This document shows, one piece after another, positions 9,981-62,668 of a stretch of DNA of 64,000 bases. Position numbers and translations under genes: made by a program. The notes under the pieces were generated by a model. The model saw only the letters and a list, made by a program, of their open reading frames with translations. It was not told the DNA's origin and did not search any database. The first letter of the stretch is position 1; each line of letters opens with the position of its first letter. The DNA lies in the IMG/VR virus record IMGVR_UViG_3300003877_000001, positions 62,001 to 126,000 of that record. One strand, written 5' to 3'.

Positions 9981-10277
9981 ATGAAGAATTTTGAATATGA
10001 AATTAAATTAAATGATGATGGTAGACCTTATATCCACATAGATGATCCTAAGTTAGAAGTATCACATAGATTTGCATGTTTAGAATTAACTAAATACATG
10101 TTATTTGAGTTAATGAAAAATAAAGAGGAACTTCCTGAAGATTTTTTAAAAGATTTAGCAATAGCAGGTGATATGGTTAGCGGTATTTCAGATAAAATGG
10201 CTGATATATTAAAAGGTCAAATGAATGCTATGAGTGATCTTGATGATATGTTAAATACAGACACAGAAGACAAATAA
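9981..10277 (+). CDS. hypothetical protein
   Basis: ORF track. Confidence 0.5.
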   Translation: MKNFEYEIKLNDDGRPYIHIDDPKLEVSHRFACLELTKYMLFELMKNKEELPEDFLKDLAIAGDMVSGISDKMADILKGQMNAMSDLDDMLNTDTEDK

Positions 10278-12697
10278 TGGGATTTAAACCTACAAAAGAA
10301 CAAGAAAAAATATTTCACTTCATTAAAAACAGAAAAGAAAACCTATTAATTGGTGCTCTTGCAGGTTGTGGTAAAACAACTACTGTTGTTGAAGGGTCTA
10401 AATTATTACCCAAAGATTCTAAAAAAATATATCTTGCATTCAATAAACATATTCAAATGGAATTGAAACAAAGATTACCAGATGATGTATTTTGTTATAC
10501 ATTTCATGGATTGGGTATGCAAGCAATTAAAAATGTATATGGGGATTCTATTAAATTTGATGAATTTAAAGTAGATGATATTGTTAATAAAAAATCAAAA
10601 AAATGGAATCTTAGTAGTGAACTACATAATAAAGAAGATATTGGTATATATTTAGGTAGAATAAAAAAGTTTGTTAATCTATGTAGATTAACAATAACAC
10701 TAGATAAAAAATATTTACCACATCTTTCAACTAAATATGATATAGAATTAGATGAACCTAGAGATCATAAAAGAGTATTTTCTGTTTTAGAAGAAATACT
10801 TAATGATCGTAAAACATTTGATTTTACAGATATGGTATTTTTACCTGCAATTGATAATAAAATTTGGATGTATCAATATGATAATGTAATGGTTGATGAA
10901 ATTCAAGATTTAAATCGTGCACAACAATATATATTAAAGAAAATTTTAAAGAAAGATAGAATATCTAAAAAGACTACTGGTAGATTAATTGCGGTTGGGG
11001 ACGTTAATCAATGTCAACCTAAAGGTAGTAAAATATTGATGCACGATGGTAGTGAAAAAAATATTGAGGACATTAAGAAGGGTGATTTTGTTGTTTCATA
11101 TAATAGAAAAGAAAAGGGTCGGTTTGTTGGAAGATATAAAAACAAAATGAGTGATTGGTTAAAAGAAAGAGCACCAATGGTTGAAGAAGTTTCTAAAAGA
11201 AAAATATATGAAAACTTAATAAAAATTAGTTCAAATAATAAAATTTCATCATATACTGAAAACCATAAAACTATGGTTAGATTTAAAAAAGAATCATTAA
11301 ATAAACATATTTTATATTTAATGAAAAAGGATGATAAGTATAGAATTGGTATTGTTAAACTATGGAACGGAAAAAATGATTTTGGATCATTCAGAGCAAG
11401 ACAAGAATCTGCCGATTCTTTTTGGATATTAAATACATATAATAATAAATTTGAAGCATACAGTGATGAACAATATTATTCATTAAAATATAAAATACCA
11501 CAATTAATTTTTAATTATAGAGATCAAAAGGGTAATATTAATCAAAAATATATTGATAAATTTTATAATAGAATAGACCTAAATGAATTACATAGTAACA
11601 TTTTTTTATTATTAAAAAATTTTAATAAAAGCATTGATTATCCCTTTTGGGAAAAAAATAAACATCAATATTTTAGTAAAAATCATATGTTTGAATTATA
11701 TGCAGTGAATATTCTTCCTAATGATATGGAAATGATCCATTATGATGTAAATAATACAGCAATTAGAACACATGGAAAAGGTTATCCATCTAAAATAGTT
11801 AAACCAACATATAAATCTATTGATTCTTTAGAATATGTACATTACTCTGATTATGTATATTCATTAAAAATAAAAAAATATGAATTATATGTTGCTGATG
11901 GTATTTTAACACATAATAGTATTTACGGATTTTCTGGTGTATCTGATAAATCATATGATTGGTTTCTTAAATTTCCTAATACAAAAATATTACCACTCAC
12001 TACTACATTTAGATGTGCTAAGAATATTGTTATAGAAGCACAAAAGATAGTGCCTACGCTACAAGCGTTACCTAATGCGATAGATGGCATCGTAAGAGAG
12101 GGTAGTGTCTTAGACGAGCCTGAAGATGGTGATTTTGTATTGTGTAGAACTACTACTCCATTAATAAAACTATTTTTTCATTATTTATTAGATGGTAAGA
12201 AAGCTGTTATTAAAGGAAGTGATATGGGAATATCATTAATTGAAATGGTACAAGGTCATAAAACACTATCACAATTAATGGCATTTTATACAAATGAATT
12301 AAAAAAATATGAAGCAGCTTTAAGAAAAAGAGGTATTCTTAATTATAGTGATGATAGTAGATATGTTGCTTTACAAGATAATGTTATGACGTTAGATTTT
12401 ATGGCTAAACTATCTACGGATATTGCAGACTTAAAAGATAAAATTAAAATGATATTTAGTGATGATTTATTTGGTATTGTTTTAAGCACTGTACATAAAT
12501 CAAAAGGATTAGAAGCAAGTCGAGTATTTATAGCAAGACCAGATAAAATGCCTCTACCAACAAAAAAAGCATGGCAATACCAACAAGAAATGAATTTAAA
12601 ATATGTTGCAATAACAAGAGCAAAACACGAACTAGTATTTGATTATGAATGGACTGATGAAGAAGAGGGTGGTAGTTTTGATATAGAAGAAGAATAA
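10277..12697 (+). CDS. UvrD/Rep SF1 helicase, intein-containing
   Basis: ALAGCGKTT, VDEIQD, VGD..Q|SIYGF.G, TVHKSKGLE, YVAITRA. Confidence 0.92.
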   Translation: MGFKPTKEQEKIFHFIKNRKENLLIGALAGCGKTTTVVEGSKLLPKDSKKIYLAFNKHIQMELKQRLPDDVFCYTFHGLGMQAIKNVYGDSIKFDEFKVDDIVNKKSKKWNLSSELHNKEDIGIYLGRIKKFVNLCRLTITLDKKYLPHLSTKYDIELDEPRDHKRVFSVLEEILNDRKTFDFTDMVFLPAIDNKIWMYQYDNVMVDEIQDLNRAQQYILKKILKKDRISKKTTGRLIAVGDVNQCQPKGSKILMHDGSEKNIEDIKKGDFVVSYNRKEKGRFVGRYKNKMSDWLKERAPMVEEVSKRKIYENLIKISSNNKISSYTENHKTMVRFKKESLNKHILYLMKKDDKYRIGIVKLWNGKNDFGSFRARQESADSFWILNTYNNKFEAYSDEQYYSLKYKIPQLIFNYRDQKGNINQKYIDKFYNRIDLNELHSNIFLLLKNFNKSIDYPFWEKNKHQYFSKNHMFELYAVNILPNDMEMIHYDVNNTAIRTHGKGYPSKIVKPTYKSIDSLEYVHYSDYVYSLKIKKYELYVADGILTHNSIYGFSGVSDKSYDWFLKFPNTKILPLTTTFRCAKNIVIEAQKIVPTLQALPNAIDGIVREGSVLDEPEDGDFVLCRTTTPLIKLFFHYLLDGKKAVIKGSDMGISLIEMVQGHKTLSQLMAFYTNELKKYEAALRKRGILNYSDDSRYVALQDNVMTLDFMAKLSTDIADLKDKIKMIFSDDLFGIVLSTVHKSKGLEASRVFIARPDKMPLPTKKAWQYQQEMNLKYVAITRAKHELVFDYEWTDEEEGGSFDIEEE
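11012..11917 (+). mobile_element. intein (302 aa) in helicase motif III
   Basis: Starts CQPKGSKILMHDG, block B TENH, ends YVADGILTHN followed by Ser. Confidence 0.92.
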
Positions 12698-47888: not shown

Positions 47889-47960
47889 GCTCGGTTCGTC
47901 TAACGGTTAGGACGGGTGGTTTTCAGCCATCAGATAGGGGTTCGATTCCCCTACCGAGTA
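47889..47960 (+). tRNA. tRNA-Glu(UUC)
   Basis: GGTGG-TTTTCAG-CCATC. Confidence 0.92.
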
Positions 47961-48011: not shown

Positions 48012-48656
48012 ATGGCAAGAAAACAAAAGAAATATCATTATTTGTATAAGACAACAAATAATTTAAACGGTAAATACTATTATGGTATGCATAGTACTGA
48101 TGATTTAAATGATGGTTATTATGGTTCAGGTAAAAGATTAAGATATTCGATTAATAAATATGGTAAAGAAAATCATAGTGTTGAAGTATTAGAGTTCTTT
48201 GAAAATAGAATTGATTTAAAAAATAAAGAAAAGGAGATTATTAATTTAAATGAAATTGCCAAAAAAGATTGTATGAATTTAGTTGTTGGTGGTGGTGGTG
48301 GATTAATAGGATTATCTGAAGACAAAAGAGAAAATATTCGTAATGGTGCATCTAAATTTTTAAAAGAAAAATGGAAAGACCCTTCATATAGAAAAATGCA
48401 AATAAAACTTTCTTCGGAAAGAATAAAAAAAACACATAAAGAAGGAAAACTTAAATATAATAATTTTAAAAATAAATATCATAATGAAGAAAGTAAAAGA
48501 AAAATGAGTGAATCTAGCAAGGGAATGGGAAAAGGGAAAAGTAACTCCCAATATGGAACATGTTGGATAACAAAAAATGATGTTAATAAAAAAATTAAAT
48601 TATTTGATTTAAATGACTATATAAAAAACGATTGGATTAAAGGTCGTATAATATAA
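48012..48656 (+). CDS. GIY-YIG (Seg-like) homing endonuclease with NUMOD3
   Basis: YLYKTTN..NGKYYYGMH..DGYYGSG; HNEESKRKMSES. Confidence 0.9.
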   Translation: MARKQKKYHYLYKTTNNLNGKYYYGMHSTDDLNDGYYGSGKRLRYSINKYGKENHSVEVLEFFENRIDLKNKEKEIINLNEIAKKDCMNLVVGGGGGLIGLSEDKRENIRNGASKFLKEKWKDPSYRKMQIKLSSERIKKTHKEGKLKYNNFKNKYHNEESKRKMSESSKGMGKGKSNSQYGTCWITKNDVNKKIKLFDLNDYIKNDWIKGRII

Positions 48657-49199: not shown

Positions 49200-49270
49200 C
49201 GTCCATTGGTGTAATGATAACATGATCGGTTGTCTCCCGATTGCCGAGGGTTTGATTCCCTCATGGACGG
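49200..49270 (+). tRNA. tRNA-Asp(GUC)
   Basis: ATCGG-TTGTCTC-CCGAT; G73; pyrimidine at position 37. Confidence 0.8.
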
Positions 49271-49272
49271 CA

Positions 49273-49671
49273 AAATTTTGTAGTCGTTCTTGTGTTGGTA
49301 AATATAGAGCAAATAAAGTAAAAAAATCAAATAAAGTTAGACGAAGTAAAAATGAAATCTATTTTGCGGATTTATGTATAGAATATTTTAAAAATGTTGA
49401 AACTAATGAAAAAATTTTTAATGGATGGGATGCTGATGTTATTATTCACGATATTAAAATAGCAATTTTATGGAATGGTAAATGGCATTATGAAAAAATA
49501 ATCAAAAATCATTCAGTAAAACAAGTACAAAATAGGGATAGATTGAAATTAATTGAAATTAAAAATTATGGATATGAACCGTACATAATAAAAGATATGG
49601 GTTCATATAATAAAAAGTTTGTTGAAGAACAATTCAAAGAATTTATAAATGCCGATGTCGCCAAGTGGTAA
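49273..49671 (+). pseudogene. Vsr-like endonuclease, 5' end missing
   Basis: FCSRSC, SKNEI.F, WDADVII...AILWNG.WHY, RD..K; the listed start lies inside tRNA-Asp. Confidence 0.6.
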
Positions 49672-50220: not shown

Positions 50221-50264
50221 TATGTAACCTTTTAAAAAAGTTTACGTATATTTGAAATATAAAC

Positions 50265-50336
50265 GGAGCATTGGTCTAACGGCTAGGATATATGACTATC
50301 ACTCATAGGGTAGGGGTTCGATTCCCCTATGTTCCG
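50265..50336 (+). tRNA. tRNA-Asp(AUC)
   Basis: TATGA-CTATCAC-TCATA; GGAGCAT/ATGTTCC stem, G73. Confidence 0.88.
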
Positions 50337-50346
50337 CACTGGTCAT

Positions 50347-50465
50347 TAAAGTATGGTGTAATGTGCACGATACTTCCATGTACCGACCAACGATAGCCTA
50401 TTAGTATGGTGACAATAGGTTGGCAACAGAAGTAAAGGATTAAGGTTAAATTCCTTATTACTTGA
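50347..50465 (+). ncRNA. tRNA-like RNA with extended anticodon arm
   Basis: D arm TGGTGTAATGTGCAC, TACTTC/GAAGTA enclosing about 50 nt, T arm TAAGG-TTAAATT-CCTTA. Confidence 0.55.
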
Positions 50466-50481
50466 AGACCTAAAAAAATAT

Positions 50482-50621
50482 GCTGTAATGGAATGAAGTG
50501 AAAACGATAAAGTATAATGCATTGAAATATCGTGGAAACTATTAGTCACTAGCGATAATTGGCATTAATCATTTAACATAGGGGTAATTTCCTATTATGG
50601 GTTCGAGTCCCCAATATGGCA
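50482..50621 (+). ncRNA. enlarged tRNA-like RNA
   Basis: GCTGTA/TATGGC ends; GGG-TTCGAGT-CCC T arm. Confidence 0.55.
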
Positions 50622-50706
50622 CAAAATTATGGTATGATGGAATTGGTATACATGTGGGTGTGACCTTCGAAAGAATAGGTGCAGATCAAACGGATATGTT
50701 AACAAA

Positions 50707-51397: not shown

Positions 51398-51616
51398 GAG
51401 GATGTGGTGGAAAGGTAAACACGCTTGTTTTAGAATAAGTACAAAGTTCATTTGGGAATAAATAATACTGATGAAGAGATGAATACCATAATGCTTACTG
51501 CTTAGTTGAACCAAGTTACCCTTCGGGATATGTCGGTAAAATAGAAATCGAAATCTAAATGATAGTAGAGGTAAGAGAGAAAGTCTGGTTTGAGGGTTCG
51601 AGTCCTTCCATCTTCA
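51398..51616 (+). ncRNA. 219-nt tRNA-Leu(UAG)-like RNA with giant variable region
   Basis: GAGGATG/CATCTTC+A; TGGTGGAAAGGTAAACAC; CTTG-TTTTAGAA-TAAG; GAGGG-TTCGAGT-CCTTC. Confidence 0.78.
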
Positions 51617-51655: not shown

Positions 51656-52009
51656 GGGGGTAACAGGAATTGACAGGATACGATAGGTAGACGGTGCAAG
51701 TATGAGGAAATTGCTCTACTCATTAAAAATAGGTAATGAACGTTTAAGTGGCGAAGCACTTGCAATGGCAGCATAACCGAAAGGTTTTTGTACCATTCGA
51801 GATACCACCAACTAGGTAGGTGTTCTCATAGATACTGATCACGTAAAGAGATCAAAAAATGTTGTGGAACATAAAACCAAAAAGTCTAATGTAATAAAGT
51901 GTTTGTAAATAAAAAACATAATGACTTAAAAATAATAAACAAACTAAACTTGTGAATGACTTTTTATTTGTAATATAACTGGACAGGAGTTCAAGTCTCC
52001 TTACTTCCA
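51656..52009 (+). ncRNA. ssrA: tmRNA, tag (A)GEALAMAA
   Basis: GGGGGTA..GGAATTGAC 5' end; tag ORF 51750-51776; TAAACTTGTGAA; GGAC-AGGAG-TTCAAGT-CTCCT-TACTTCC-A with G3.U70. Confidence 0.95.
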
Positions 52010-52015
52010 CAATAT

Positions 52016-54817: not shown

Positions 54818-56572
54818 ATGAAAACTTTAGAACTATTTAATGCGGTTGTAAAAAAAGATACAAAAGATAATGTTTTTGTATCAGAAGATGGATATATTAT
54901 CGAATCTGGTGCTTTATGGGCAAAAGATAGAATTGTAACCTATTATAATAGTCGTAGATTAAATGGTAATGATTTAAATAAAACATTTCATAAATCATGG
55001 TTAAAAATAAAAAATAGTTCAAGATATGAACTATTGGTTGATCAAATAAAACATTATATATCTACATATGGTAGTGGATTTAAAGATGATGTTTATATCC
55101 CTGATGAAGTATTAGATATTTCAGGATTAAAAATATCATTTAAAGTTGTTAAAGCATATACTAAAGATGAATTAATTGATAAATCATTATCATTACTTCA
55201 ATCTGGTATTGCTTTGAAAGAAGAAACAATAAATGATTTATTATCAATTCTTGTAGATGAACTTGATTATGAATTTACTGGTAAAGAAAATATTCGTAAC
55301 AAAGAAGCAATAATTAAAATTGCAGATATATATGGGGTATTACCAATAGATACTATGGAGTTTTTTAGATATATTATCTATCGTACAACAGGACAATCAT
55401 TATTAATTAAAAATTATAAAATGATTGAATTGATAAAAGATAGTAATTATAATCCATCTGCACAATTTAAGAAATTTGGATTAGAAAAACTTTCTGAAAT
55501 ATTTAATAGATTTAAGCCGTTATTTTTAGCTTTTAAACCTAAATGTAGTGGTACTATTAATAGAATTTCAAAGTTATCTAAAAAATATCATAAGCCACTT
55601 CTTAGTAATCCATTAAATGAAGTAACTTCGGTTACATTTAATGAAGGTGATGATCACTGGTTAGATAATGCAACACCATTTGCTTTATTTAAAGCATTGT
55701 CTGCTTGTTGGACAAGAATGAATGGACAAGATGCTTTTGTATATAGAATTAGAAATGGTAAATCATTTGCTAAGATGAATTCTACTGATGCAGGTATTGC
55801 AGGATATAATTATGGACATATTCTTAATTATATTAAAAATAGATTTGATCTTTCAGGTAAGAAAATATTTCTTCCAGAAGATGTAGAATATGCTTTACCA
55901 ACATCTGAAAAGATGTACGTAGGTAATGTTCCAACAGGAACAAGATTCTATGGTAATGCTCTTGCTGTTGGTATTTATTGGAAAAACTCTTGGGGTGCAA
56001 CTGACCTTGATTTATCTGGTTTGAATATCGGTGGAAAAGTCGGTTGGAATTCAGATTATAAACAAGGTGGATCATTGTATTTCTCTGGTGATATTACCAA
56101 CGCACCTAATGGTGCTGTTGAGTATCTTTATGCAAATAGAGGACTTAGTGAACCAACTTTGGTAATGAATAATGTATTTAGTGGAAACCCTGATTCAGAA
56201 TTCAAGATCATCGTAGGTAAAGGTGATAATATCAATAAGAATTATATGATGAACCCTGAAAAGTTGTTCGTGGATATTAAGACACAATCAGTTCAAACTC
56301 AAAGTGTGTTAGGTATATTTCTTCCAGTTGGTAACGAGAGACAATCTTTTGTTATTTTGAACTTCGGTTCTGGTAGAGAACATATTTCTAGTTATGGTGA
56401 AGTTGCAAATATAACAACAAAGGCACTTTATCAACAATGGAACAATGCACTTACTTTGAGAGAAGTAATTGGAAAATTAGGTGTTGAATTTGTTACTGAT
56501 CCTGAAAAGGCAGATAATGATTTAAGTTTAAATACAATTGAAAAAGATTCTATAATGAATCTTTTTATATAA
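54818..56572 (+). CDS. stress-related protein with C-terminal TerD-like motifs
   Basis: GIYW....DLDLS...GWN....FSGDITNAP.GA.EY. Confidence 0.6.
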   Translation: MKTLELFNAVVKKDTKDNVFVSEDGYIIESGALWAKDRIVTYYNSRRLNGNDLNKTFHKSWLKIKNSSRYELLVDQIKHYISTYGSGFKDDVYIPDEVLDISGLKISFKVVKAYTKDELIDKSLSLLQSGIALKEETINDLLSILVDELDYEFTGKENIRNKEAIIKIADIYGVLPIDTMEFFRYIIYRTTGQSLLIKNYKMIELIKDSNYNPSAQFKKFGLEKLSEIFNRFKPLFLAFKPKCSGTINRISKLSKKYHKPLLSNPLNEVTSVTFNEGDDHWLDNATPFALFKALSACWTRMNGQDAFVYRIRNGKSFAKMNSTDAGIAGYNYGHILNYIKNRFDLSGKKIFLPEDVEYALPTSEKMYVGNVPTGTRFYGNALAVGIYWKNSWGATDLDLSGLNIGGKVGWNSDYKQGGSLYFSGDITNAPNGAVEYLYANRGLSEPTLVMNNVFSGNPDSEFKIIVGKGDNINKNYMMNPEKLFVDIKTQSVQTQSVLGIFLPVGNERQSFVILNFGSGREHISSYGEVANITTKALYQQWNNALTLREVIGKLGVEFVTDPEKADNDLSLNTIEKDSIMNLFI

Positions 56573-57460: not shown

Positions 57461-58108
57461 ATGAAAATATTATTAATTAGTGATAGTCATGGACTACACA
57501 AAGCATGGGAAAAAATCTTCCCCCTCCCTAAAGTTGATATGATAATTCATGCAGGTGATCTAACTAATGTAGGTGCAATTCATGAAATGAATGAATTTAT
57601 GTTTTGGTTTAAGAATCTTGATATTGAATATAAAATAATGATTGCAGGAAATCACGATAAAGGTCTTGATAATTTTAACAGATATACTATGCTTGATATG
57701 ATTCAAGATAGTGAAATCCATTATCTTGAAGATTCTGGAGTAGAGATTGAAGGAATTAAGTTTTGGGGTTCACCTATGACACCACCATTTTTCAATTGGG
57801 CATTTATGCGTGACGAAGAACAAATCAAAAAGCATTGGGATGCAATTCCTGATGATACTGATTTTCTAATCACTCACGGTCCTGCCAATGGTATTTTGGA
57901 TTGGGTTGATTATAAAAATGGTGGAAGTGTAGGGTGTCCTTATCTTCTTGAAACAATTCAAGAAAGAGTGAAGCCTAAATATCATGTATTTGGTCATATA
58001 CATGAGATGTATGGGACTAGAGTAGTTGGTGAGACTACACATATATGTGCATCTGTTTTAGATGGTAGATATCATCCTGTTAGATCAGGCATTATAATTA
58101 ATTTCTGA
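57461..58108 (+). CDS. calcineurin-like metallophosphoesterase
   Basis: SDSH, HAGD, AGNHD, THGP, FGHIHE. Confidence 0.93.
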   Translation: MKILLISDSHGLHKAWEKIFPLPKVDMIIHAGDLTNVGAIHEMNEFMFWFKNLDIEYKIMIAGNHDKGLDNFNRYTMLDMIQDSEIHYLEDSGVEIEGIKFWGSPMTPPFFNWAFMRDEEQIKKHWDAIPDDTDFLITHGPANGILDWVDYKNGGSVGCPYLLETIQERVKPKYHVFGHIHEMYGTRVVGETTHICASVLDGRYHPVRSGIIINF

Positions 58109-58148
58109 ATCTCTTGCAATTGTCAGGAGATTTATGTATTTTTGAATT

Positions 58149-58418
58149 ATGGTAATAGAAAATAACAAAAAAGAAATAAAATTTTTAAAATCACTAGGTT
58201 TTAAAAAAGATGGTTTTGATGATAATTTAGGGGTTTGGTATACAAAAAAAATTAAACATTTCGTTCTAGGTAAATGCCTAATAGATGTCCAAGATTTTCA
58301 AAATAAAGCAATGATTAATATTGATACTATGGACGATAATCAAAATTATGTTACTATAACAGAAAACATACCATATAATAGAGAAAATCTTTTAATGGTA
58401 ATTGGGTTTTTAACATGA
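58149..58418 (+). CDS. hypothetical protein
   Basis: ORF track. Confidence 0.5.
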   Translation: MVIENNKKEIKFLKSLGFKKDGFDDNLGVWYTKKIKHFVLGKCLIDVQDFQNKAMINIDTMDDNQNYVTITENIPYNRENLLMVIGFLT

Positions 58419-58447
58419 GTAAATTTTTAAAAGATAAAGGATGATAT

Positions 58448-58948
58448 ATGTCATTATTATTAAGACATAAACCAGAGAAAGAAGATTTAAATCTTGATTC
58501 TCAAGGTTATGTCTTAGTTGATGAATTAATAAATAAACTTGAAATCACAATTACTGATCTCAAGTGGATTATCGATAATAATGATAAAAAAAGATTTAGT
58601 TTTAATGCTGATGAAACAATGATACGTGCAGCACAAGGACATTCTATTGATGTTGATCTTAAAATGAAAAGAATATTACCACCAGATTTATTATATCATG
58701 GTACTACAATAGCTAATGCTGAAAAAATACATAAGAGTGGTTTAAATAAAATGAATAGAAATCATGTTCATTTAACAGATAATAGAGAAACTGCATATTC
58801 GGTAGGAATGAGATATGCCAAATATCAAAATAAAATTTGGATGATTACTATTGATGCAAAACAATTGAATAAAGATGGTTATGAATTTTATAAATCTGAA
58901 AATGGAATATATTTAACAGAAGAAGTACCTTCAAAATATTTTATTTAA
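58448..58948 (+). CDS. kptA: RNA 2'-phosphotransferase (Tpt1/KptA)
   Basis: LLRH.P, DKKRF, IRAAQGHS, LYHGT, RNHVHL. Confidence 0.93.
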   Translation: MSLLLRHKPEKEDLNLDSQGYVLVDELINKLEITITDLKWIIDNNDKKRFSFNADETMIRAAQGHSIDVDLKMKRILPPDLLYHGTTIANAEKIHKSGLNKMNRNHVHLTDNRETAYSVGMRYAKYQNKIWMITIDAKQLNKDGYEFYKSENGIYLTEEVPSKYFI

Positions 58949-59202
58949 TCTACAATGACAATAGGATATAAATACTTTCTATTAACTCGACCAAAGACCA
59001 TACTATCATTTCTAACTTTAGTATCCCTAATTAATATACCTTCGATAATTGAAATACGATCAATATAAACAATAATACGATGATCACCATCATCATAATA
59101 CCATGCAGAATTAATTGGATATTTATTTGTTTTCTTTAATGTAACACATGAATATGGTAATAATAATAATAATAAAAATAATATGTATTTTTTTAGTTTC
59201 AT
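58945..59202 (-). CDS. putative lipoprotein
   Basis: Signal peptide with lipobox-like YSC. Confidence 0.55.
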   Translation of the reverse strand: MKLKKYILFLLLLLLPYSCVTLKKTNKYPINSAWYYDDGDHRIIVYIDRISIIEGILIRDTKVRNDSMVFGRVNRKYLYPIVIVD

Positions 59203-59292
59203 AAGTTTAGATTATATAAAAATAAATACTTATTTTTCTTATGTAAAATTTTATAAAATGATAAAAAAATATATAATAAAATATAGAATAAA

Positions 59293-60327
59293 ATGATTAA
59301 TAAATCAGAAATCTTTAAAAACAAATCACATTGGGTGAATATGACAGAAATTGAATTATTATCATATCAAACAAAAATTTTTAAATACTATTGTGAGAAT
59401 GGATTTCCATATTATCCAACGGATGATGAATATCGTAAAAGGGAATTTAATAAACTTCAAAAATATAATTATTCTGAATTAATTGAAAATGGAATTGTTA
59501 AACAAACAATGCATGGTCTTGGTCTTGCATGGTCATACTTTCCACACTCATTTGATGTTAAATGTAATAATAAAAAAACACCCATAGAAGTATTTAATAA
59601 TGATGATTTTTTTATGGAAGTGATTAGTAAACGATTACAAATAGGAACATTTATTTCAGATGCTGGAATTCGAAAAATGTTAAAAATGTTTACCAATACA
59701 CAAGGTGTTTCTAATTTTAGACCAACAGCAGCAGCAGCAATATATGATAAATATGCAGCTAATGGTGTTGTATGGGATATGTCTGGTGGTTGGGGAGGTA
59801 GAATGCTTGGTGCTGCGATAAGTAGCGTTAAGAAATATATTACAACTGAACCATCAATAAAAACATTTCTTGGATTGGTTGATTTATCTAAATTAATATC
59901 AAAAGTTGGTGTTAATATGGAATTTGTTTTATCAGCACAAGGTAGTGAAATATTTATACCTGAAAAAAATTCATTAAATTTATGTTTTACATCTCCACCA
60001 TATTTTGATTTAGAAAAATATTCGGATGAAGATAGTCAAAGCTATATTAAATATAGTAATAAACAAGATTGGGTTAGTGGTTTTTTAAAAAACACTTTTA
60101 ATAATTGTTATTACGGTTTAAAAAATAATGGACACATGTTAATTAATATTGCTGACTCAAAGAAAAATAACAATATTTCACTAGAACAAGCAACTATCGA
60201 TACAGCAATTAGTTGTGGATTTAAACATGTTGACACATTAAAATTGGCATTATCAAATCCAAACATGAAAAATAGAACATCAGCATTTAAATATGAACCA
60301 ATATTTGTTTTTAAGAAATATGAGTAA
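59293..60327 (+). CDS. DNA methyltransferase (N4-C/N6-A type)
   Basis: D.SGGWGGR, FTSPPYFDLE.Y. Confidence 0.85.
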   Translation: MINKSEIFKNKSHWVNMTEIELLSYQTKIFKYYCENGFPYYPTDDEYRKREFNKLQKYNYSELIENGIVKQTMHGLGLAWSYFPHSFDVKCNNKKTPIEVFNNDDFFMEVISKRLQIGTFISDAGIRKMLKMFTNTQGVSNFRPTAAAAIYDKYAANGVVWDMSGGWGGRMLGAAISSVKKYITTEPSIKTFLGLVDLSKLISKVGVNMEFVLSAQGSEIFIPEKNSLNLCFTSPPYFDLEKYSDEDSQSYIKYSNKQDWVSGFLKNTFNNCYYGLKNNGHMLINIADSKKNNNISLEQATIDTAISCGFKHVDTLKLALSNPNMKNRTSAFKYEPIFVFKKYE

Positions 60328-60406
60328 ACACAATATTGGTACTGCGCATCAACATTATAGAGGAATTGAAAACAAATAACCTAACTATTTAAAGTAAATA
60401 AAATAA

Positions 60407-60901
60407 ATGAAAAAACATATTCTTAATGAAAGAATAAGAGGCTCTGAAATTAGATTAGTAGGACATCAAATTTATGAAAATAATATTATACCAACTGCCG
60501 AAGCATTAAATTTAGCAAATACAGAAGGGTTAGACTTGGTATTAATAAATCCAAACGAGTCACCTGCTATTTGTAAGATTATGGATTATAATAAATTCAC
60601 ATATAATCAAAAAAAGAATGAAAAGAAAAGTAGTTCTCCAAAACTAAAAGAAATAAAATTTACTCCAAATATTACTGACAATGATTTGAATGTAAAAGTA
60701 AAACAAGCTAGAAAATTTCTTGAAAAGGGAAGTGTAATTAACATACATGTATTCTTTAAAGGAAGAGAAATTGCACATAAAGATAGAGGTAAGGAAGTAT
60801 TATTTAAATTCTTAAACGAACTTATAGATATTGGTATATTTAATTTGGATATAGTCTTTAAAGGAAAAAGAATTATCCACCAAATAAGACCTAAAAGATA
60901 G
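60407..60901 (+). CDS. infC: translation initiation factor IF-3
   Basis: NE.IR..EIRLV, GLDLV.I.P...P..CKIMDY.KF, KEIKF.P.I...D, F.GRE. Confidence 0.95.
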   Translation: MKKHILNERIRGSEIRLVGHQIYENNIIPTAEALNLANTEGLDLVLINPNESPAICKIMDYNKFTYNQKKNEKKSSSPKLKEIKFTPNITDNDLNVKVKQARKFLEKGSVINIHVFFKGREIAHKDRGKEVLFKFLNELIDIGIFNLDIVFKGKRIIHQIRPKR

Positions 60902-60954
60902 TAACCATTTTATAATATTTTTAATTTGAAAGAGTATTTATAGGTGATAATGAT

Positions 60955-61590
60955 TTGAAATTAATTGAAATGGTTCAAAAATGGTTGGAATATGATGGTA
61001 AAATATATCACAAAAAAACAACACATGAATTAGCACATTCAATCACTATTACATCAAAAAATATGGTTACAAAATTAAATGAACATAATGTAACCCCAAA
61101 CAAAAGTTTTACGTATAAATATAATAACATTGCATTGTTTAATGAATTTTTACAGGGTTATGTTGAGGGTGATGGTTGTGTTGGAATATATAATAGTTCA
61201 ACAACTGACTATTATTATATTAGTTTTTTTGGTAATGAAGATTTTAAAGATAGTATTATAAATTTATTACCTACAAAACCTAAACTAAGAAAAGTTAATA
61301 ATAAATTTTATGAAATTAAATTTTTGGGTAAAATAGGAATTGAATTTAGTGATTGGTTATAGAATGACCCAATATATATTGATAGTCCTAAATATAAAAA
61401 ATATATTGACTTTAAAAAAAATTATTTAACTAAGACAAAATATTATAAATATGGTTTATTAAATAGAAAAATAGATAATTTATTAAATGAAAATGTAGAA
61501 CCAAAAATTATAGCAGAAAAACTTAATATTAATAAAAGGACTGTATATAATTATAAATATAATAAGAAAAATGGAAAAAATACTTACTAA
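60955..61590 (+). pseudogene. degenerate LAGLIDADG endonuclease
   Basis: FLQGYVEGDG; the frame continues past TAG at 61360 into an HTH-like tail. Confidence 0.6.
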
Positions 61591-62668
61591 AATAGAATGG
61601 AGTGTTATTAATGAATATATTGAAAAGGGTTTATTAATTACTAATAAACACCCAACTAAAGATATATGGGTTCTAAATTATTCTAAAACATGTGCATTTG
61701 AAAAGGAATGGGATTTAATTACATTATCTTGTCGTGGACTTTTTGTTGACATCGATGGTAATATTGTTGGTCGAAGCATGAAAAAATTCTTCAATTTAGA
61801 AGAACACGATCCTTCTGATATTCCAACTGATTTATCATTTGAAGCATTTGAAAAAATGGATGGTTCATTGGGTATTTTATTTAATTATGAAGGTGATTGG
61901 ATATTTGCTTCAAGAGGTTCATTTGAATCAGAACAAGCCATTAAAGGTGGTGAAATCATGCTTAATATTGAAAATTCTTATAGATTTTTAAATGGTGATA
62001 ATACATATGTATTTGAAATTATATATCCTGAAAATCGTATTGTTATTGATTATGGTAAGACTGAAGATTTGGTTCTTTTAGGTGTTATCAATACTGATGG
62101 TGGTGATGAAATGTCATATGATGATATGGTGTATAATCACTCTGATGAATTTACTATTGTTGAAAAGTATGATGTAACATCTGATATTTCTAAATTAAAG
62201 GAATTAGAAGAAGATAACAAAGAAGGATTTGTTGTACGTTATTCTAATGGCTTCCGTGTAAAAGTAAAATTCGATGAATATTGCAGATTACATAGAATCG
62301 TTACTAACGTATCTAATAAGACAATTTGGGAATCATTGAAAAATGGTGAAGGATTGGATGAAGTTATTGATAGAGTTCCTGATGAATTCTACAATTGGGT
62401 TAGACGTACTGAAAAGGGTTTAAATGATATGTATATTGAAATTGAAGTTGAAACATTACGTGAATTCGTTAGGGTAACTAATTTAGTTAGTTTGAAAAAT
62501 GGATTTGATCCTTTTGAAAGAAAGAAAGAATTTGCTTTAATAGCAAAAGAATTTAAACATTCTGGATTATTATTTTCTATGTATAATAATAAAAATTATT
62601 CTGAAGCAATTTGGAAAATGATTAAACCAGACTGGTCAACACCATTTAGAGATGGGTATGAAAATTAG
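61571..62668 (+). CDS. RNA ligase (T4 Rnl1-like)
   Basis: CRG, KFFN, EKMDGS, FE, EGFVV, RVKVK..Y..LH. Confidence 0.92.
   Translation: MEKILTKIEWSVINEYIEKGLLITNKHPTKDIWVLNYSKTCAFEKEWDLITLSCRGLFVDIDGNIVGRSMKKFFNLEEHDPSDIPTDLSFEAFEKMDGSLGILFNYEGDWIFASRGSFESEQAIKGGEIMLNIENSYRFLNGDNTYVFEIIYPENRIVIDYGKTEDLVLLGVINTDGGDEMSYDDMVYNHSDEFTIVEKYDVTSDISKLKELEEDNKEGFVVRYSNGFRVKVKFDEYCRLHRIVTNVSNKTIWESLKNGEGLDEVIDRVPDEFYNWVRRTEKGLNDMYIEIEVETLREFVRVTNLVSLKNGFDPFERKKEFALIAKEFKHSGLLFSMYNNKNYSEAIWKMIKPDWSTPFRDGYEN

What the first reader, a model, noticed from the sequence alone, without database searches (positions are those of the whole stretch)
50265..50336. tRNA-Asp with AUC anticodon
The cloverleaf is otherwise canonical for Asp (G73, C38) but has A34. 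Bacteria decode GAU/GAC with a G(Q)UC tRNA, and A34 in a split codon box is normally avoided because I34 would also read GAA. It fits the phage's GAT bias and would escape queuosine/GUC-specific nucleases. Leader 2 contains adjacent GAC GAT codons.
Basis: partly seen in the sequence, partly recalled or inferred. Interest (0 to 1): 0.6.

Follow-up and report, generated by a model that had tools for sequence, protein, structure and literature searches.

The report
Phage aspartate tRNA with AUC anticodon
A giant uncultured phage carries a real, evolutionarily maintained aspartate tRNA whose anticodon starts with A instead of the usual G; this rare design was shown to work once in Streptomyces and most likely reads only GAU, the phage's strongly preferred aspartate codon.

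Summary
Window 50265-50336 (+) is a high-scoring tRNA with anticodon loop CUAUCAC (A34 at 50298), G73, C38, G2-C71 and G10.

It is not an assembly error. The same base is present in two separately assembled sister samples, and a third assembly (about 19x) shows no difference.

It is not a singleton. A diverged relative from another sample (L129, 77% nt identity) has the orthologous AUC tRNA. Of 21 stem pairs, 5 show compensatory and 2 wobble-compatible changes, none is broken, and the loop is identical. A third family member (G027) also has an Asp-type AUC tRNA. Its sister G001 has GUC in the same slot, and 13 near-complete relatives have none.

The genome is 27.5% GC and uses GAT 11-fold more than GAC. 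It encodes no TGT, AspRS or TadA-like deaminase.

Published work shows a Streptomyces tRNA-Asp-AUC stays A34 and decodes GAU, and that an AUC anticodon in E. coli reads only GAU without detectable inosine.

Best reading: an unmodified-A34, GAU-specific Asp tRNA matching codon demand. This is a new (phage) member of a known rare kind. The window copy is also a mosaic with Glu-like D and T arms. Nuclease escape remains untested.

The parts
50265..50336 (+). tRNA-Asp(AUC), 72 nt to the discriminator G73, no encoded CCA
   Evidence: ARAGORN, Rfam 59 bits, cloverleaf; ortholog comparison shows 5 compensatory and 0 broken pairs
50298..50300 (+). Anticodon A34-U35-C36 within loop CUAUCAC (50296-50302)
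   Evidence: loop identical in L129 and G027 AUC tRNAs
50240..50264 (+). Conserved upstream motif (gtttacgtata..aaatataaac) that abuts the tRNA 5' end; possible promoter or processing signal (inferred only)
   Evidence: Same motif upstream of the L129 ortholog; the sigma-70 scan finds nothing above background
49200..49270 (+). Companion tRNA-Asp(GUC), loop UUGUCUC with U37 and a D-loop without GG; the only other Asp tRNA in the genome
   Evidence: (50.9 bits); ortholog L129:2278-2349 also has U37
47889..47960 (+). tRNA-Glu(UUC) whose D-arm (14/16), T-arm (17/17) and 4-nt variable loop match those of the AUC tRNA (mosaic partner)
50338..50622 (+). Non-coding element that directly follows the AUC tRNA and ends in a T-arm/acceptor-like sequence; shared 3' part in L129; function unknown
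   Evidence: no Rfam or ARAGORN call
58448..58948 (+). Context: Tpt1/KptA RNA 2'-phosphotransferase
   Evidence: Pfam PF01885, 159 bits
61571..62668 (+). Context: T4 Rnl1-type RNA ligase (tRNA repair)
   Evidence: Pfam PF09511, 71.7 bits
57461..58108 (+). Context: calcineurin-like metallophosphoesterase next to the repair genes
   Evidence: Pfam PF00149, 64.9 bits

Best explanation
This is a functional phage tRNA that the host AspRS charges with aspartate. Its wobble base stays an unmodified adenosine, so it reads GAU by a full Watson-Crick match and essentially nothing else. It supplements a single, atypical GUC tRNA in a 27.5% GC, 326 kb T4-like jumbo phage in which GAU makes up 92% of Asp codons and about 6% of all codons. 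Its decoding does not depend on queuosine. The gene has been kept under purifying selection in at least two diverged phages, and the same anticodon occurs in a third member of the subclade.

Shown: the gene, its fold, conservation with covariation, Asp identity nucleotides, the codon bias, and the absence of phage TGT, TadA and AspRS.

Inferred: charging with Asp, lack of A-to-I editing, GAU-only reading, and codon supply as the selective reason.
For: It is a real tRNA. The same base is present in the two JGI sister-sample assemblies, and a Logan contig of the region shows no difference.

The ortholog in L129 (Logan ERR14788039) is syntenic, at 77% mean nt identity over the alignable half. It shares the upstream motif and has an identical 7-nt loop. 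Of 21 stem pairs, 14 are the same, 2 changed on one side, 5 are compensatory and 0 are broken.

G027 (capsid 82% identical) has an Asp-type AUC tRNA in the slot where its sister G001 (capsid 88% identical to G027) has GUC.

Asp identity elements G73, C38, U35, C36, G2-C71 and G10 are present. All family Glu tRNAs have A73. With base 34 masked, profile scores are L129 53.4 Asp vs 19.9 Glu and G027 46.6 vs 17.5; leave-one-out gives 39/40 correct.

GAT 4248 vs GAC 393. The genome sits at the AT-rich end of its family.

There is no TGT and no class II AspRS, and the only deaminase is of ComEB/dCMP type.

Literature: the Streptomyces tRNA-Asp-AUC is 97% A at position 34 and decodes GAU (PMC9262613). 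An AUC anticodon in E. coli read GAU only, with GAC, GAA and GAG below detection and no inosine; TadA is very specific for the ACG loop (PMC11066159).
Against: There is no expression, aminoacylation or modification data for this tRNA, because no RNA run holds it. G34 is an AspRS identity element, so charging may be reduced. The window copy has Glu-like D and T arms and scores equally on Asp and Glu profiles. Other U-rich split boxes (AAT 72 per 1000, TAT 42 per 1000) did not acquire A34 tRNAs, so codon supply alone does not explain why only Asp did. Thirteen near-complete relatives with similar composition manage with GUC only.
Confidence: 0.65

Rival explanations
1. Counter-defence is the main driver. 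Replacing G34 removes the G/Q34-U35 dinucleotide that colicin E5-type anticodon nucleases (or an unknown host tRNase or modifier specific for tRNA-Asp) recognise. This would give the phage an Asp decoder that survives host tRNA depletion; decoding of GAU is then a by-product.
For: [quoted passage not shown] Colicin E5 cleaves between Q34 and U35 of Tyr, His, Asn and Asp tRNAs (PMC1635277, PMC1669751). The tRNA array sits beside a T4 Rnl1 ligase, Tpt1 and a phosphoesterase, which is a tRNA repair set (also in relatives). The only other Asp tRNA carries an unusual U37 loop change, unique among 45 tRNAs.
Against: His(GUG x2), Asn(GUU x2) and Tyr(GUA) tRNAs of the same phage keep G34-U35, so a general GU-specific nuclease is not being avoided. 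No Asp-specific anticodon nuclease is known to me. The host is unknown. Nothing here tests cleavage.
Confidence: 0.15
2. A34 is deaminated to inosine by host TadA or an unrecognised phage enzyme, so the tRNA reads GAU and GAC, with some risk of reading GAA.
For: In most organisms, encoded A34 is converted to I34. The same phage family also carries Leu(AAG), an anticodon that is I-modified in some bacteria (PMC8266599 abstract).
Against: The loop is CU-AUC-AC, which differs from the TadA substrate loop (ACG, A38) at positions 35, 36 and 38. AUC was not modified in E. coli even in an ideal loop, and changes at 32, 37 or 38 blocked TadA (PMC11066159). Streptomyces tRNA-Asp-AUC is 97% A. The phage deaminase is of dCMP type: ComEB 72.5 bits vs TadA 28.9. 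The phage uses Arg(GCG) rather than Arg(ACG). I34 would misread the very frequent GAA codon, 62 per 1000.
Confidence: 0.06
3. It is a neutral or decaying variant: a redundant Asp tRNA copy that picked up G34A and is poorly charged or unused.
For: The family carries 2-3 Asp tRNA genes per genome, so copies are redundant. Most relatives lack AUC. G34 is an AspRS identity element.
Against: Five compensatory and no disruptive stem changes between orthologs at 77% genome identity show continued selection on the fold. The loop is invariant in three phages. In the window's genome this is the only Asp tRNA with a canonical loop (A37) and D-loop GG.
Confidence: 0.07
4. The tRNA has Glu or dual identity. 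The window copy, with its Glu-like core, would be charged by GluRS and insert Glu at GAU.
For: The D-arm (U11-A24, U13-G22), the 4-nt variable loop and the T-arm equal those of the phage tRNA-Glu. Profile scores are equal. A separate viral contig (L195) has a clearly Glu-type body (A73) with an AUC anticodon.
Against: The acceptor stem, G73, G2-C71 and C38 follow the Asp class. All family Glu tRNAs have A73 and C2-G71. The orthologs are unambiguously Asp. GluRS depends strongly on modified U34 (established knowledge, not tested here). Glu at 6% of all codons would be highly damaging.
Confidence: 0.03

Closest known systems
Streptomyces tRNA-Asp-AUC (strain SPC6; Chen et al., NAR 2022, PMC9262613)
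   Same: An Asp tRNA with an AUC anticodon that coexists with GUC copies. A34 remains unmodified, and the tRNA gives cognate decoding of GAU independently of queuosine.
   Different: The Streptomyces tRNA is bacterial and chromosomal, lies in a high-GC genome where GAU is rare and regulatory, and has a non-canonical loop (purine 32, C33) and a weak anticodon stem (Cove score 29). The phage tRNA has a canonical C32-U33 loop, scores 59 bits, and sits in a 27.5% GC genome where GAU is the dominant codon. The paper calls the other predicted cases non-homologous. Sequence homology to the phage tRNA was not tested here.
Engineered A34 tRNAs in E. coli (M. jannaschii tRNA with AUC anticodon, PMC11066159)
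   Same: The same anticodon, which reads GAU only and shows no inosine.
   Different: It is an artificial orthogonal tRNA charged with Tyr, not a natural Asp acceptor.
Bacterial tRNA-Arg(ACG)/TadA I34 system, and Leu(AAG) I34 in some Firmicutes
   Same: A34 is encoded in the gene.
   Different: Those lie in four-codon boxes and are deaminated. The loop here lacks the TadA determinants, and the codon box is split.
Phage tRNAs with anticodon-loop mutations proposed to evade anticodon nucleases (PMC10264068)
   Same: A phage-encoded tRNA with a change inside the anticodon loop, located next to tRNA repair genes.
   Different: Those changes leave the anticodon intact. Here the wobble base itself is changed and the decoding range is narrowed. 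No nuclease link is shown.
Mycoplasma tRNA-Thr(AGU) with unmodified A34 (cited in PMC11066159)
   Same: A natural tRNA with unmodified A34.
   Different: It is in a four-codon box and reads several codons; it is not in a split box.

Membership tests
tRNA (RF00005) | Cloverleaf with conserved D and T loop elements, scoring above the Rfam gathering threshold | tested here: met
   59 bits against a cut-off of 29; ARAGORN 7/4/5/5 cloverleaf with U8, A14, GG in the D-loop, TTCGA in the T-loop and U33
Bacterial tRNA-Asp (AspRS identity set) | Discriminator G73 | tested here: met
   G at 50336. All 20 family Asp tRNAs end in G73, while the Glu tRNAs have A73
Bacterial tRNA-Asp (AspRS identity set) | U35, C36, C38 | tested here: met
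   Loop CUAUCAC
Bacterial tRNA-Asp (AspRS identity set) | G34 (normally modified to Q34) | tested here: not met
   A at 50298. This is the finding itself. AspRS tolerance of A34 is shown only by the Streptomyces precedent (PMC9262613)
Bacterial tRNA-Asp (AspRS identity set) | G2-C71 and G10 | tested here: met
   Cloverleaf
Bacterial tRNA-Asp (AspRS identity set) | Overall body resembles the family's Asp tRNAs rather than its Glu tRNAs (base 34 masked) | tested here: inconclusive
   Window copy 46.5 (Asp) vs 45.6 (Glu) bits. Orthologs are clearly Asp: L129 53.4 vs 19.9, G027 46.6 vs 17.5. Mosaic arms shown
Bacterial tRNA-Asp (AspRS identity set) | Aminoacylation with aspartate | not testable with these tools
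   Needs biochemistry. The phage encodes no AspRS
TadA substrates (I34 tRNAs) | Anticodon loop of tRNA-Arg(ACG) type (C35, G36, A38) | tested here: not met
   The loop has U35, C36 and C38. AUC was unmodified in E. coli (PMC11066159)
tRNA-Asp-AUC kind (unmodified A34, GAU decoder; PMC9262613) | AUC anticodon on an Asp-type acceptor that coexists with GUC isoacceptors | tested here: met
tRNA-Asp-AUC kind (unmodified A34, GAU decoder; PMC9262613) | A34 remains unmodified and GAU is decoded | not testable with these tools
   No RNA data; inferred from the literature
tRNA-Glu of this phage family | A73, C2-G71, YUUUCAN loop | tested here: not met
   The window tRNA has G73, G2-C71 and C38

The most novel reading that the evidence does not exclude
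The wobble G-to-A change is a counter-defence adaptation. Together with the U37 variant of the companion GUC tRNA and the adjacent Rnl1/Tpt1/phosphoesterase repair genes, the phage would field Asp decoders that cannot be recognised by a host nuclease or modifier keyed on G/Q34-U35 of tRNA-Asp. That would be the first natural case of defence escape by rewriting the anticodon's first base. A linked possibility is that tRNA arms are exchanged as modules between tRNA genes: the window copy carries Glu-type D and T arms.
Probability: 0.15. Interest if true: 0.7.

Novelty: new member of a known kind. Interest (0 to 1): 0.45.

Why it matters
A34 in a split codon box is one of the most strongly avoided tRNA designs, and natural tRNAs with unmodified A34 are very rare.

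This example has a canonical fold and is evolutionarily maintained. It sits in a phage where the cognate codon is about 6% of all codons, which is the opposite codon-usage context from the single characterised bacterial case.

It offers a natural system for three questions: how well AspRS tolerates A34, how strictly unmodified A34 discriminates U from C on a native tRNA body, and whether phages tune decoding (or evade tRNA-targeting defences) by editing the wobble base itself.

It also cautions annotators not to dismiss such calls as errors.

Tried and rejected
(1) My first degenerate pattern had one N too many and found nothing; it was corrected.

(2) The single metagenome scan, with D-arm and T-arm fixed and the anticodon free, returned 21 contigs. 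All were unrelated cellular tRNA-Glu(UUC) genes sharing those arms. This gave no relatives but prompted the Asp-versus-Glu test.

(3) BLAST of the 73-nt tRNA against 26 family records gave only weak hits, mostly to tRNA-Glu.

(4) A generic viral scan with the wrong loop-to-T-loop spacing gave 48 hits and no tRNA. It serves only as a background estimate.

(5) Run X2, another sample of the same study, holds a related-strain contig over 50218-50583. The difference table was truncated, so base 34 in that strain is unknown. Attempts to fetch that contig through exact protein look-ups returned only the two JGI records. Short contigs of P0002 cluster members and the P0003/P0004 contigs did not reach the Asp tRNA locus.

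Among 120 loci there were three predicted AUC tRNAs, all with A73, so no frequency estimate is possible.

(7) The 17/17 identity between the G027 and L129 anticodon arms is not claimed as recombination, because 13 of those positions are shared by many family Asp tRNAs.

(8) ARAGORN with introns allowed finds no tRNA in the element downstream of the AUC tRNA.

(9) The phage is not a Lak phage. The Lak-C1 match is a 260-nt stretch only, and the best deposited-phage capsid identity is 33%.

(10) The sigma-70 promoter scan upstream gave nothing above shuffled background.

Full report
**What is there**

Window 50265-50336 (+) is a tRNA gene. ARAGORN calls tRNA-Asp(atc). Rfam's tRNA model scores it at 59 bits, E 1e-10, among the best of about two dozen tRNAs in this part of the window.

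ARAGORN's cloverleaf is fully canonical, with 7/4/5/5 stems and no mismatches:
- U8, A14, GG in the D-loop and TTCGA in the T-loop.
- Anticodon loop C32-U33-A34-U35-C36-A37-C38.
- A 4-nt variable loop, discriminator G and no encoded CCA.

A34 is base 50298.

**The genome**

The window is bases 62001-126000 of a 325,854-bp IMG/VR virus record from a hydrothermal-vent metagenome.
- GC content is 27.5%.
- The capsid, portal and terminase are T4-like.
- There is no close deposited relative; the best capsid identity is 33%. The Lak-C1 hit is only a 260-nt patch.
- The genome has 46 tRNA genes.

**Not an error**

The same base is present in two separately assembled sister samples, JGI 3300003877 and 3300003876. 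These are 100% identical apart from a few 30-60-bp indels. A Logan assembly at depth about 19 also shows no difference over the region. These represent one phage population, so they exclude an assembly slip but say nothing about evolution.

**Not a singleton**

The 584-aa gene downstream led to contig L129 (Logan ERR14788039, 14.8 kb).
- L129 is syntenic with window 47-62 kb.
- It is only 77% identical over the 54% that aligns.
- It has a tRNA-Asp(AUC) at the same place, behind the same upstream motif.

Comparing the two cloverleaves pair by pair gives 14 identical pairs, 2 one-sided wobble-compatible changes, 5 compensatory double changes and no broken pair. The 7-nt anticodon loop is identical. 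This is the signature of a tRNA kept functional in both lineages.

A corrected IMG/VR-wide scan for a CUAUCAC loop at the right distance from a T-loop gave 58 hits, of which only six are tRNAs. One is the window's own population.

Another hit is G027, a 178-kb contig of the same family.
- Its capsid is 82% identical to the window's.
- It has an Asp-type, G73, AUC tRNA at the head of a three-gene Asp cluster.

G027's sister phage G001 (capsid 88% identical) has a GUC tRNA in the orthologous slot.

Fourteen large relatives, 13 of them at least 90% complete, have two or three Asp(GUC) genes and no AUC tRNA.

A34 therefore characterises a subclade and has changed state at least twice there. A single origin cannot be separated from repeated origins with these data.

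**Identity**

AUC is one substitution from both GUC (Asp) and UUC (Glu). The tRNA's best BLAST matches in relatives were tRNA-Glu, and the metagenome pattern hits were cellular tRNA-Glu genes with the same D and T arms. I therefore tested identity.

In this family the two classes separate cleanly:
- Asp tRNAs have G73 and mostly CUGUCAC loops.
- Glu tRNAs have A73, C2-G71 and YUUUCAN loops.

The AUC tRNA has G73, G2-C71, G10, U35, C36 and C38. That is the full classical AspRS identity set except G34.

I built profile HMMs from 20 Asp and 20 Glu family tRNAs with base 34 masked. Leave-one-out classification was correct for 39 of 40.

| tRNA | Asp score (bits) | Glu score (bits) |
|---|---|---|
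| L129 AUC | 53.4 | 19.9 |
| G027 AUC | 46.6 | 17.5 |
| Window AUC | 46.5 | 45.6 |

The window copy ties because it is a mosaic:
- The acceptor stem (13/14), discriminator and loop (7/7) follow the L129 ortholog.
- The D-arm (14/16), T-arm (17/17) and 4-nt variable loop equal those of the phage's own tRNA-Glu at 47889-47960.

Asp identity remains the most likely reading, because the known AspRS determinants lie in the parts that are Asp-like. The Glu-like core is a caveat.

**Genomic logic**

- In ORFs of at least 200 aa, GAT outnumbers GAC 4248 to 393, or 59.9 against 5.5 per 1000 codons.
- The genome is at the AT-rich, GAT-rich end of its family (a rough measure).
- The only other Asp tRNA (49200-49270, GUC) has a UUGUCUC loop. 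It is the only tRNA among 45 with a pyrimidine at position 37, and its D-loop lacks GG.
- Only two tRNAs have A34: Asp-AUC and Leu-AAG. There is no Arg-ACG, and Arg-GCG is present instead.
- The genome has no TGT-family gene and no class II AspRS. Its one cytidine-deaminase-fold protein is of dCMP/ComEB type, 72.5 bits against 28.9 for TadA.

**Mechanism**

Two papers bear directly on this.

Chen et al. 2022 (PMC9262613) described a Streptomyces tRNA-Asp-AUC.
- It is 97% A at position 34 by small-RNA sequencing.
- It enhances decoding of GAU.
- They found such genes predicted in only five other bacterial genomes.

Schmitt et al. 2024 (PMC11066159) tested an AUC anticodon in E. coli.
- It read GAU only; GAC, GAA and GAG were below detection.
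- It showed no inosine.
- TadA was blocked by changes at positions 32, 37 or 38.

The phage loop differs from the TadA substrate at positions 35, 36 and 38.

The best-supported model is therefore an Asp-charged tRNA with unmodified A34 that reads GAU specifically, does not depend on queuosine, and supplies the phage's dominant Asp codon. Charging, modification state and decoding are inferred, not shown.

**Rivals**

- *Nuclease escape.* This has literature support as a concept (PMC10264068, and colicin E5 in PMC1635277 and PMC1669751). It has suggestive context here: a T4 Rnl1 ligase, Tpt1, a phosphoesterase and IF3 lie just downstream, and the companion tRNA has U37. However, the His, Asn and Tyr tRNAs keep G34-U35, and nothing here tests cleavage.
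- *Inosine formation.* This is unlikely for the reasons given under Mechanism, and it would misread GAA (62 per 1000 codons).
- *Decay.* This is contradicted by the covariation between orthologs.
- *Glu charging.* This is unlikely given G73 and G2-C71 and the clearly Asp-type orthologs.

**Novelty**

The design is known from one characterised bacterial case. My literature searches found no report of it in phages. In IMG/VR it is very rare for this loop type. In a truncated sample of cellular genomes, the only three predicted AUC tRNAs had A73.

I file it as a new, phage-borne member of the rare tRNA-Asp-AUC kind, of apparently separate origin. It has a canonical loop and sits in the opposite codon-usage context from the Streptomyces case.

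**Limits**

- Only contigs, not raw reads, could be laid.
- Base 34 in the related strain of run X2 could not be read.
- Two scans were wasted on mis-spaced patterns.
- The host is unknown. The 584-aa gene's roughly 65% identity to Flavobacteriia proteins hints at Bacteroidota.

Noticed in passing
window 49200-49270 (+); L129:2278-2349: The companion tRNA-Asp(GUC) has U at position 37 (loop UUGUCUC). It is the only pyrimidine-37 among the genome's 45 tRNAs with 3-nt anticodons. U37 is conserved in the L129 ortholog and in Asp(GUC) tRNAs of other relatives (L089, L094).
   Followed up: partly
window 50265-50336 vs 47889-47960: The AUC tRNA is a mosaic. Its D-arm (14/16), T-arm (17/17) and variable-loop length equal those of the neighbouring tRNA-Glu(UUC), while its acceptor and anticodon loop follow the Asp(AUC) ortholog. 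This suggests exchange of arms between tRNA genes, or convergence.
   Followed up: partly
window 50338-50622 (+); L129:2487-2692: A non-coding element directly follows the AUC tRNA in both phages and ends in a T-arm/acceptor-like sequence (GGTTCGA.TCC...GGCACA). A comparable 170-nt element lies in the Asp cluster of G027 and G001. There is no Rfam or ARAGORN call, even with introns allowed.
   Followed up: partly
window 51656-52012 (+): A tmRNA-like gene scores 43 bits on Rfam, just under the gathering score of 47. Relatives have ARAGORN-called tmRNAs with tag peptides at the equivalent place (L097, L125, L132).
   Followed up: no
window 51398-51616 (+): An Rfam tRNA match (30.4 bits) spans 219 nt, which implies a tRNA with a roughly 150-nt insertion.
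   Followed up: no
window 57461-62668 (+): A translation and tRNA-repair island: metallophosphoesterase, Tpt1/KptA 2'-phosphotransferase, a DNA methylase-like ORF, IF3 and a T4 Rnl1-type RNA ligase. Relatives add an RF-1-domain protein and Mom-like genes.
   Followed up: partly
window 54818-56572 (+): A 584-aa protein with no Pfam domain is about 65% identical to chromosomal proteins of Flavobacteriia (Tenacibaculum, Zobellia, Aquimarina). It is absent from 15 other family records searched. It is probably a host-derived gene and a hint at a Bacteroidota host.
   Followed up: partly
G000:157717-157787 (outside the window): A tRNA with a CUA anticodon, a potential TAG suppressor. The large genes in the window are intact under code 11, and I did not establish any recoding.
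   Followed up: no
G000:145952-146035 (outside the window); L091, L092: tRNA-Leu(AAG), a second A34 tRNA, is present here and in at least two relatives. The genome has Arg(GCG) and no Arg(ACG).
   Followed up: no
L195:2609-2681 (IMGVR_UViG_3300022190_001663): An unrelated viral contig carries a clearly Glu-type tRNA body (A73, G1-U72; Glu profile 49 bits against Asp 37) with an AUC anticodon.
   Followed up: no
window 49391-49650 (+): A 260-nt stretch between the Asp(GUC) and Met tRNAs is 77% identical to Prevotella phage Lak-C1. It is the only deposited-phage match in the region besides the homing-endonuclease gene.
   Followed up: no
window 48012-48656 (+): A 214-aa ORF inside the tRNA array has 68-70% nucleotide identity over about 175 nt to T4-type SegB/SegD homing endonuclease genes. 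L129 has a different 228-aa ORF between its Asp tRNAs.
   Followed up: no
window 10277-12697 (+): A UvrD-type helicase with a weak intein-splicing-domain hit (residues 254-547) that interrupts the helicase domains.
   Followed up: no
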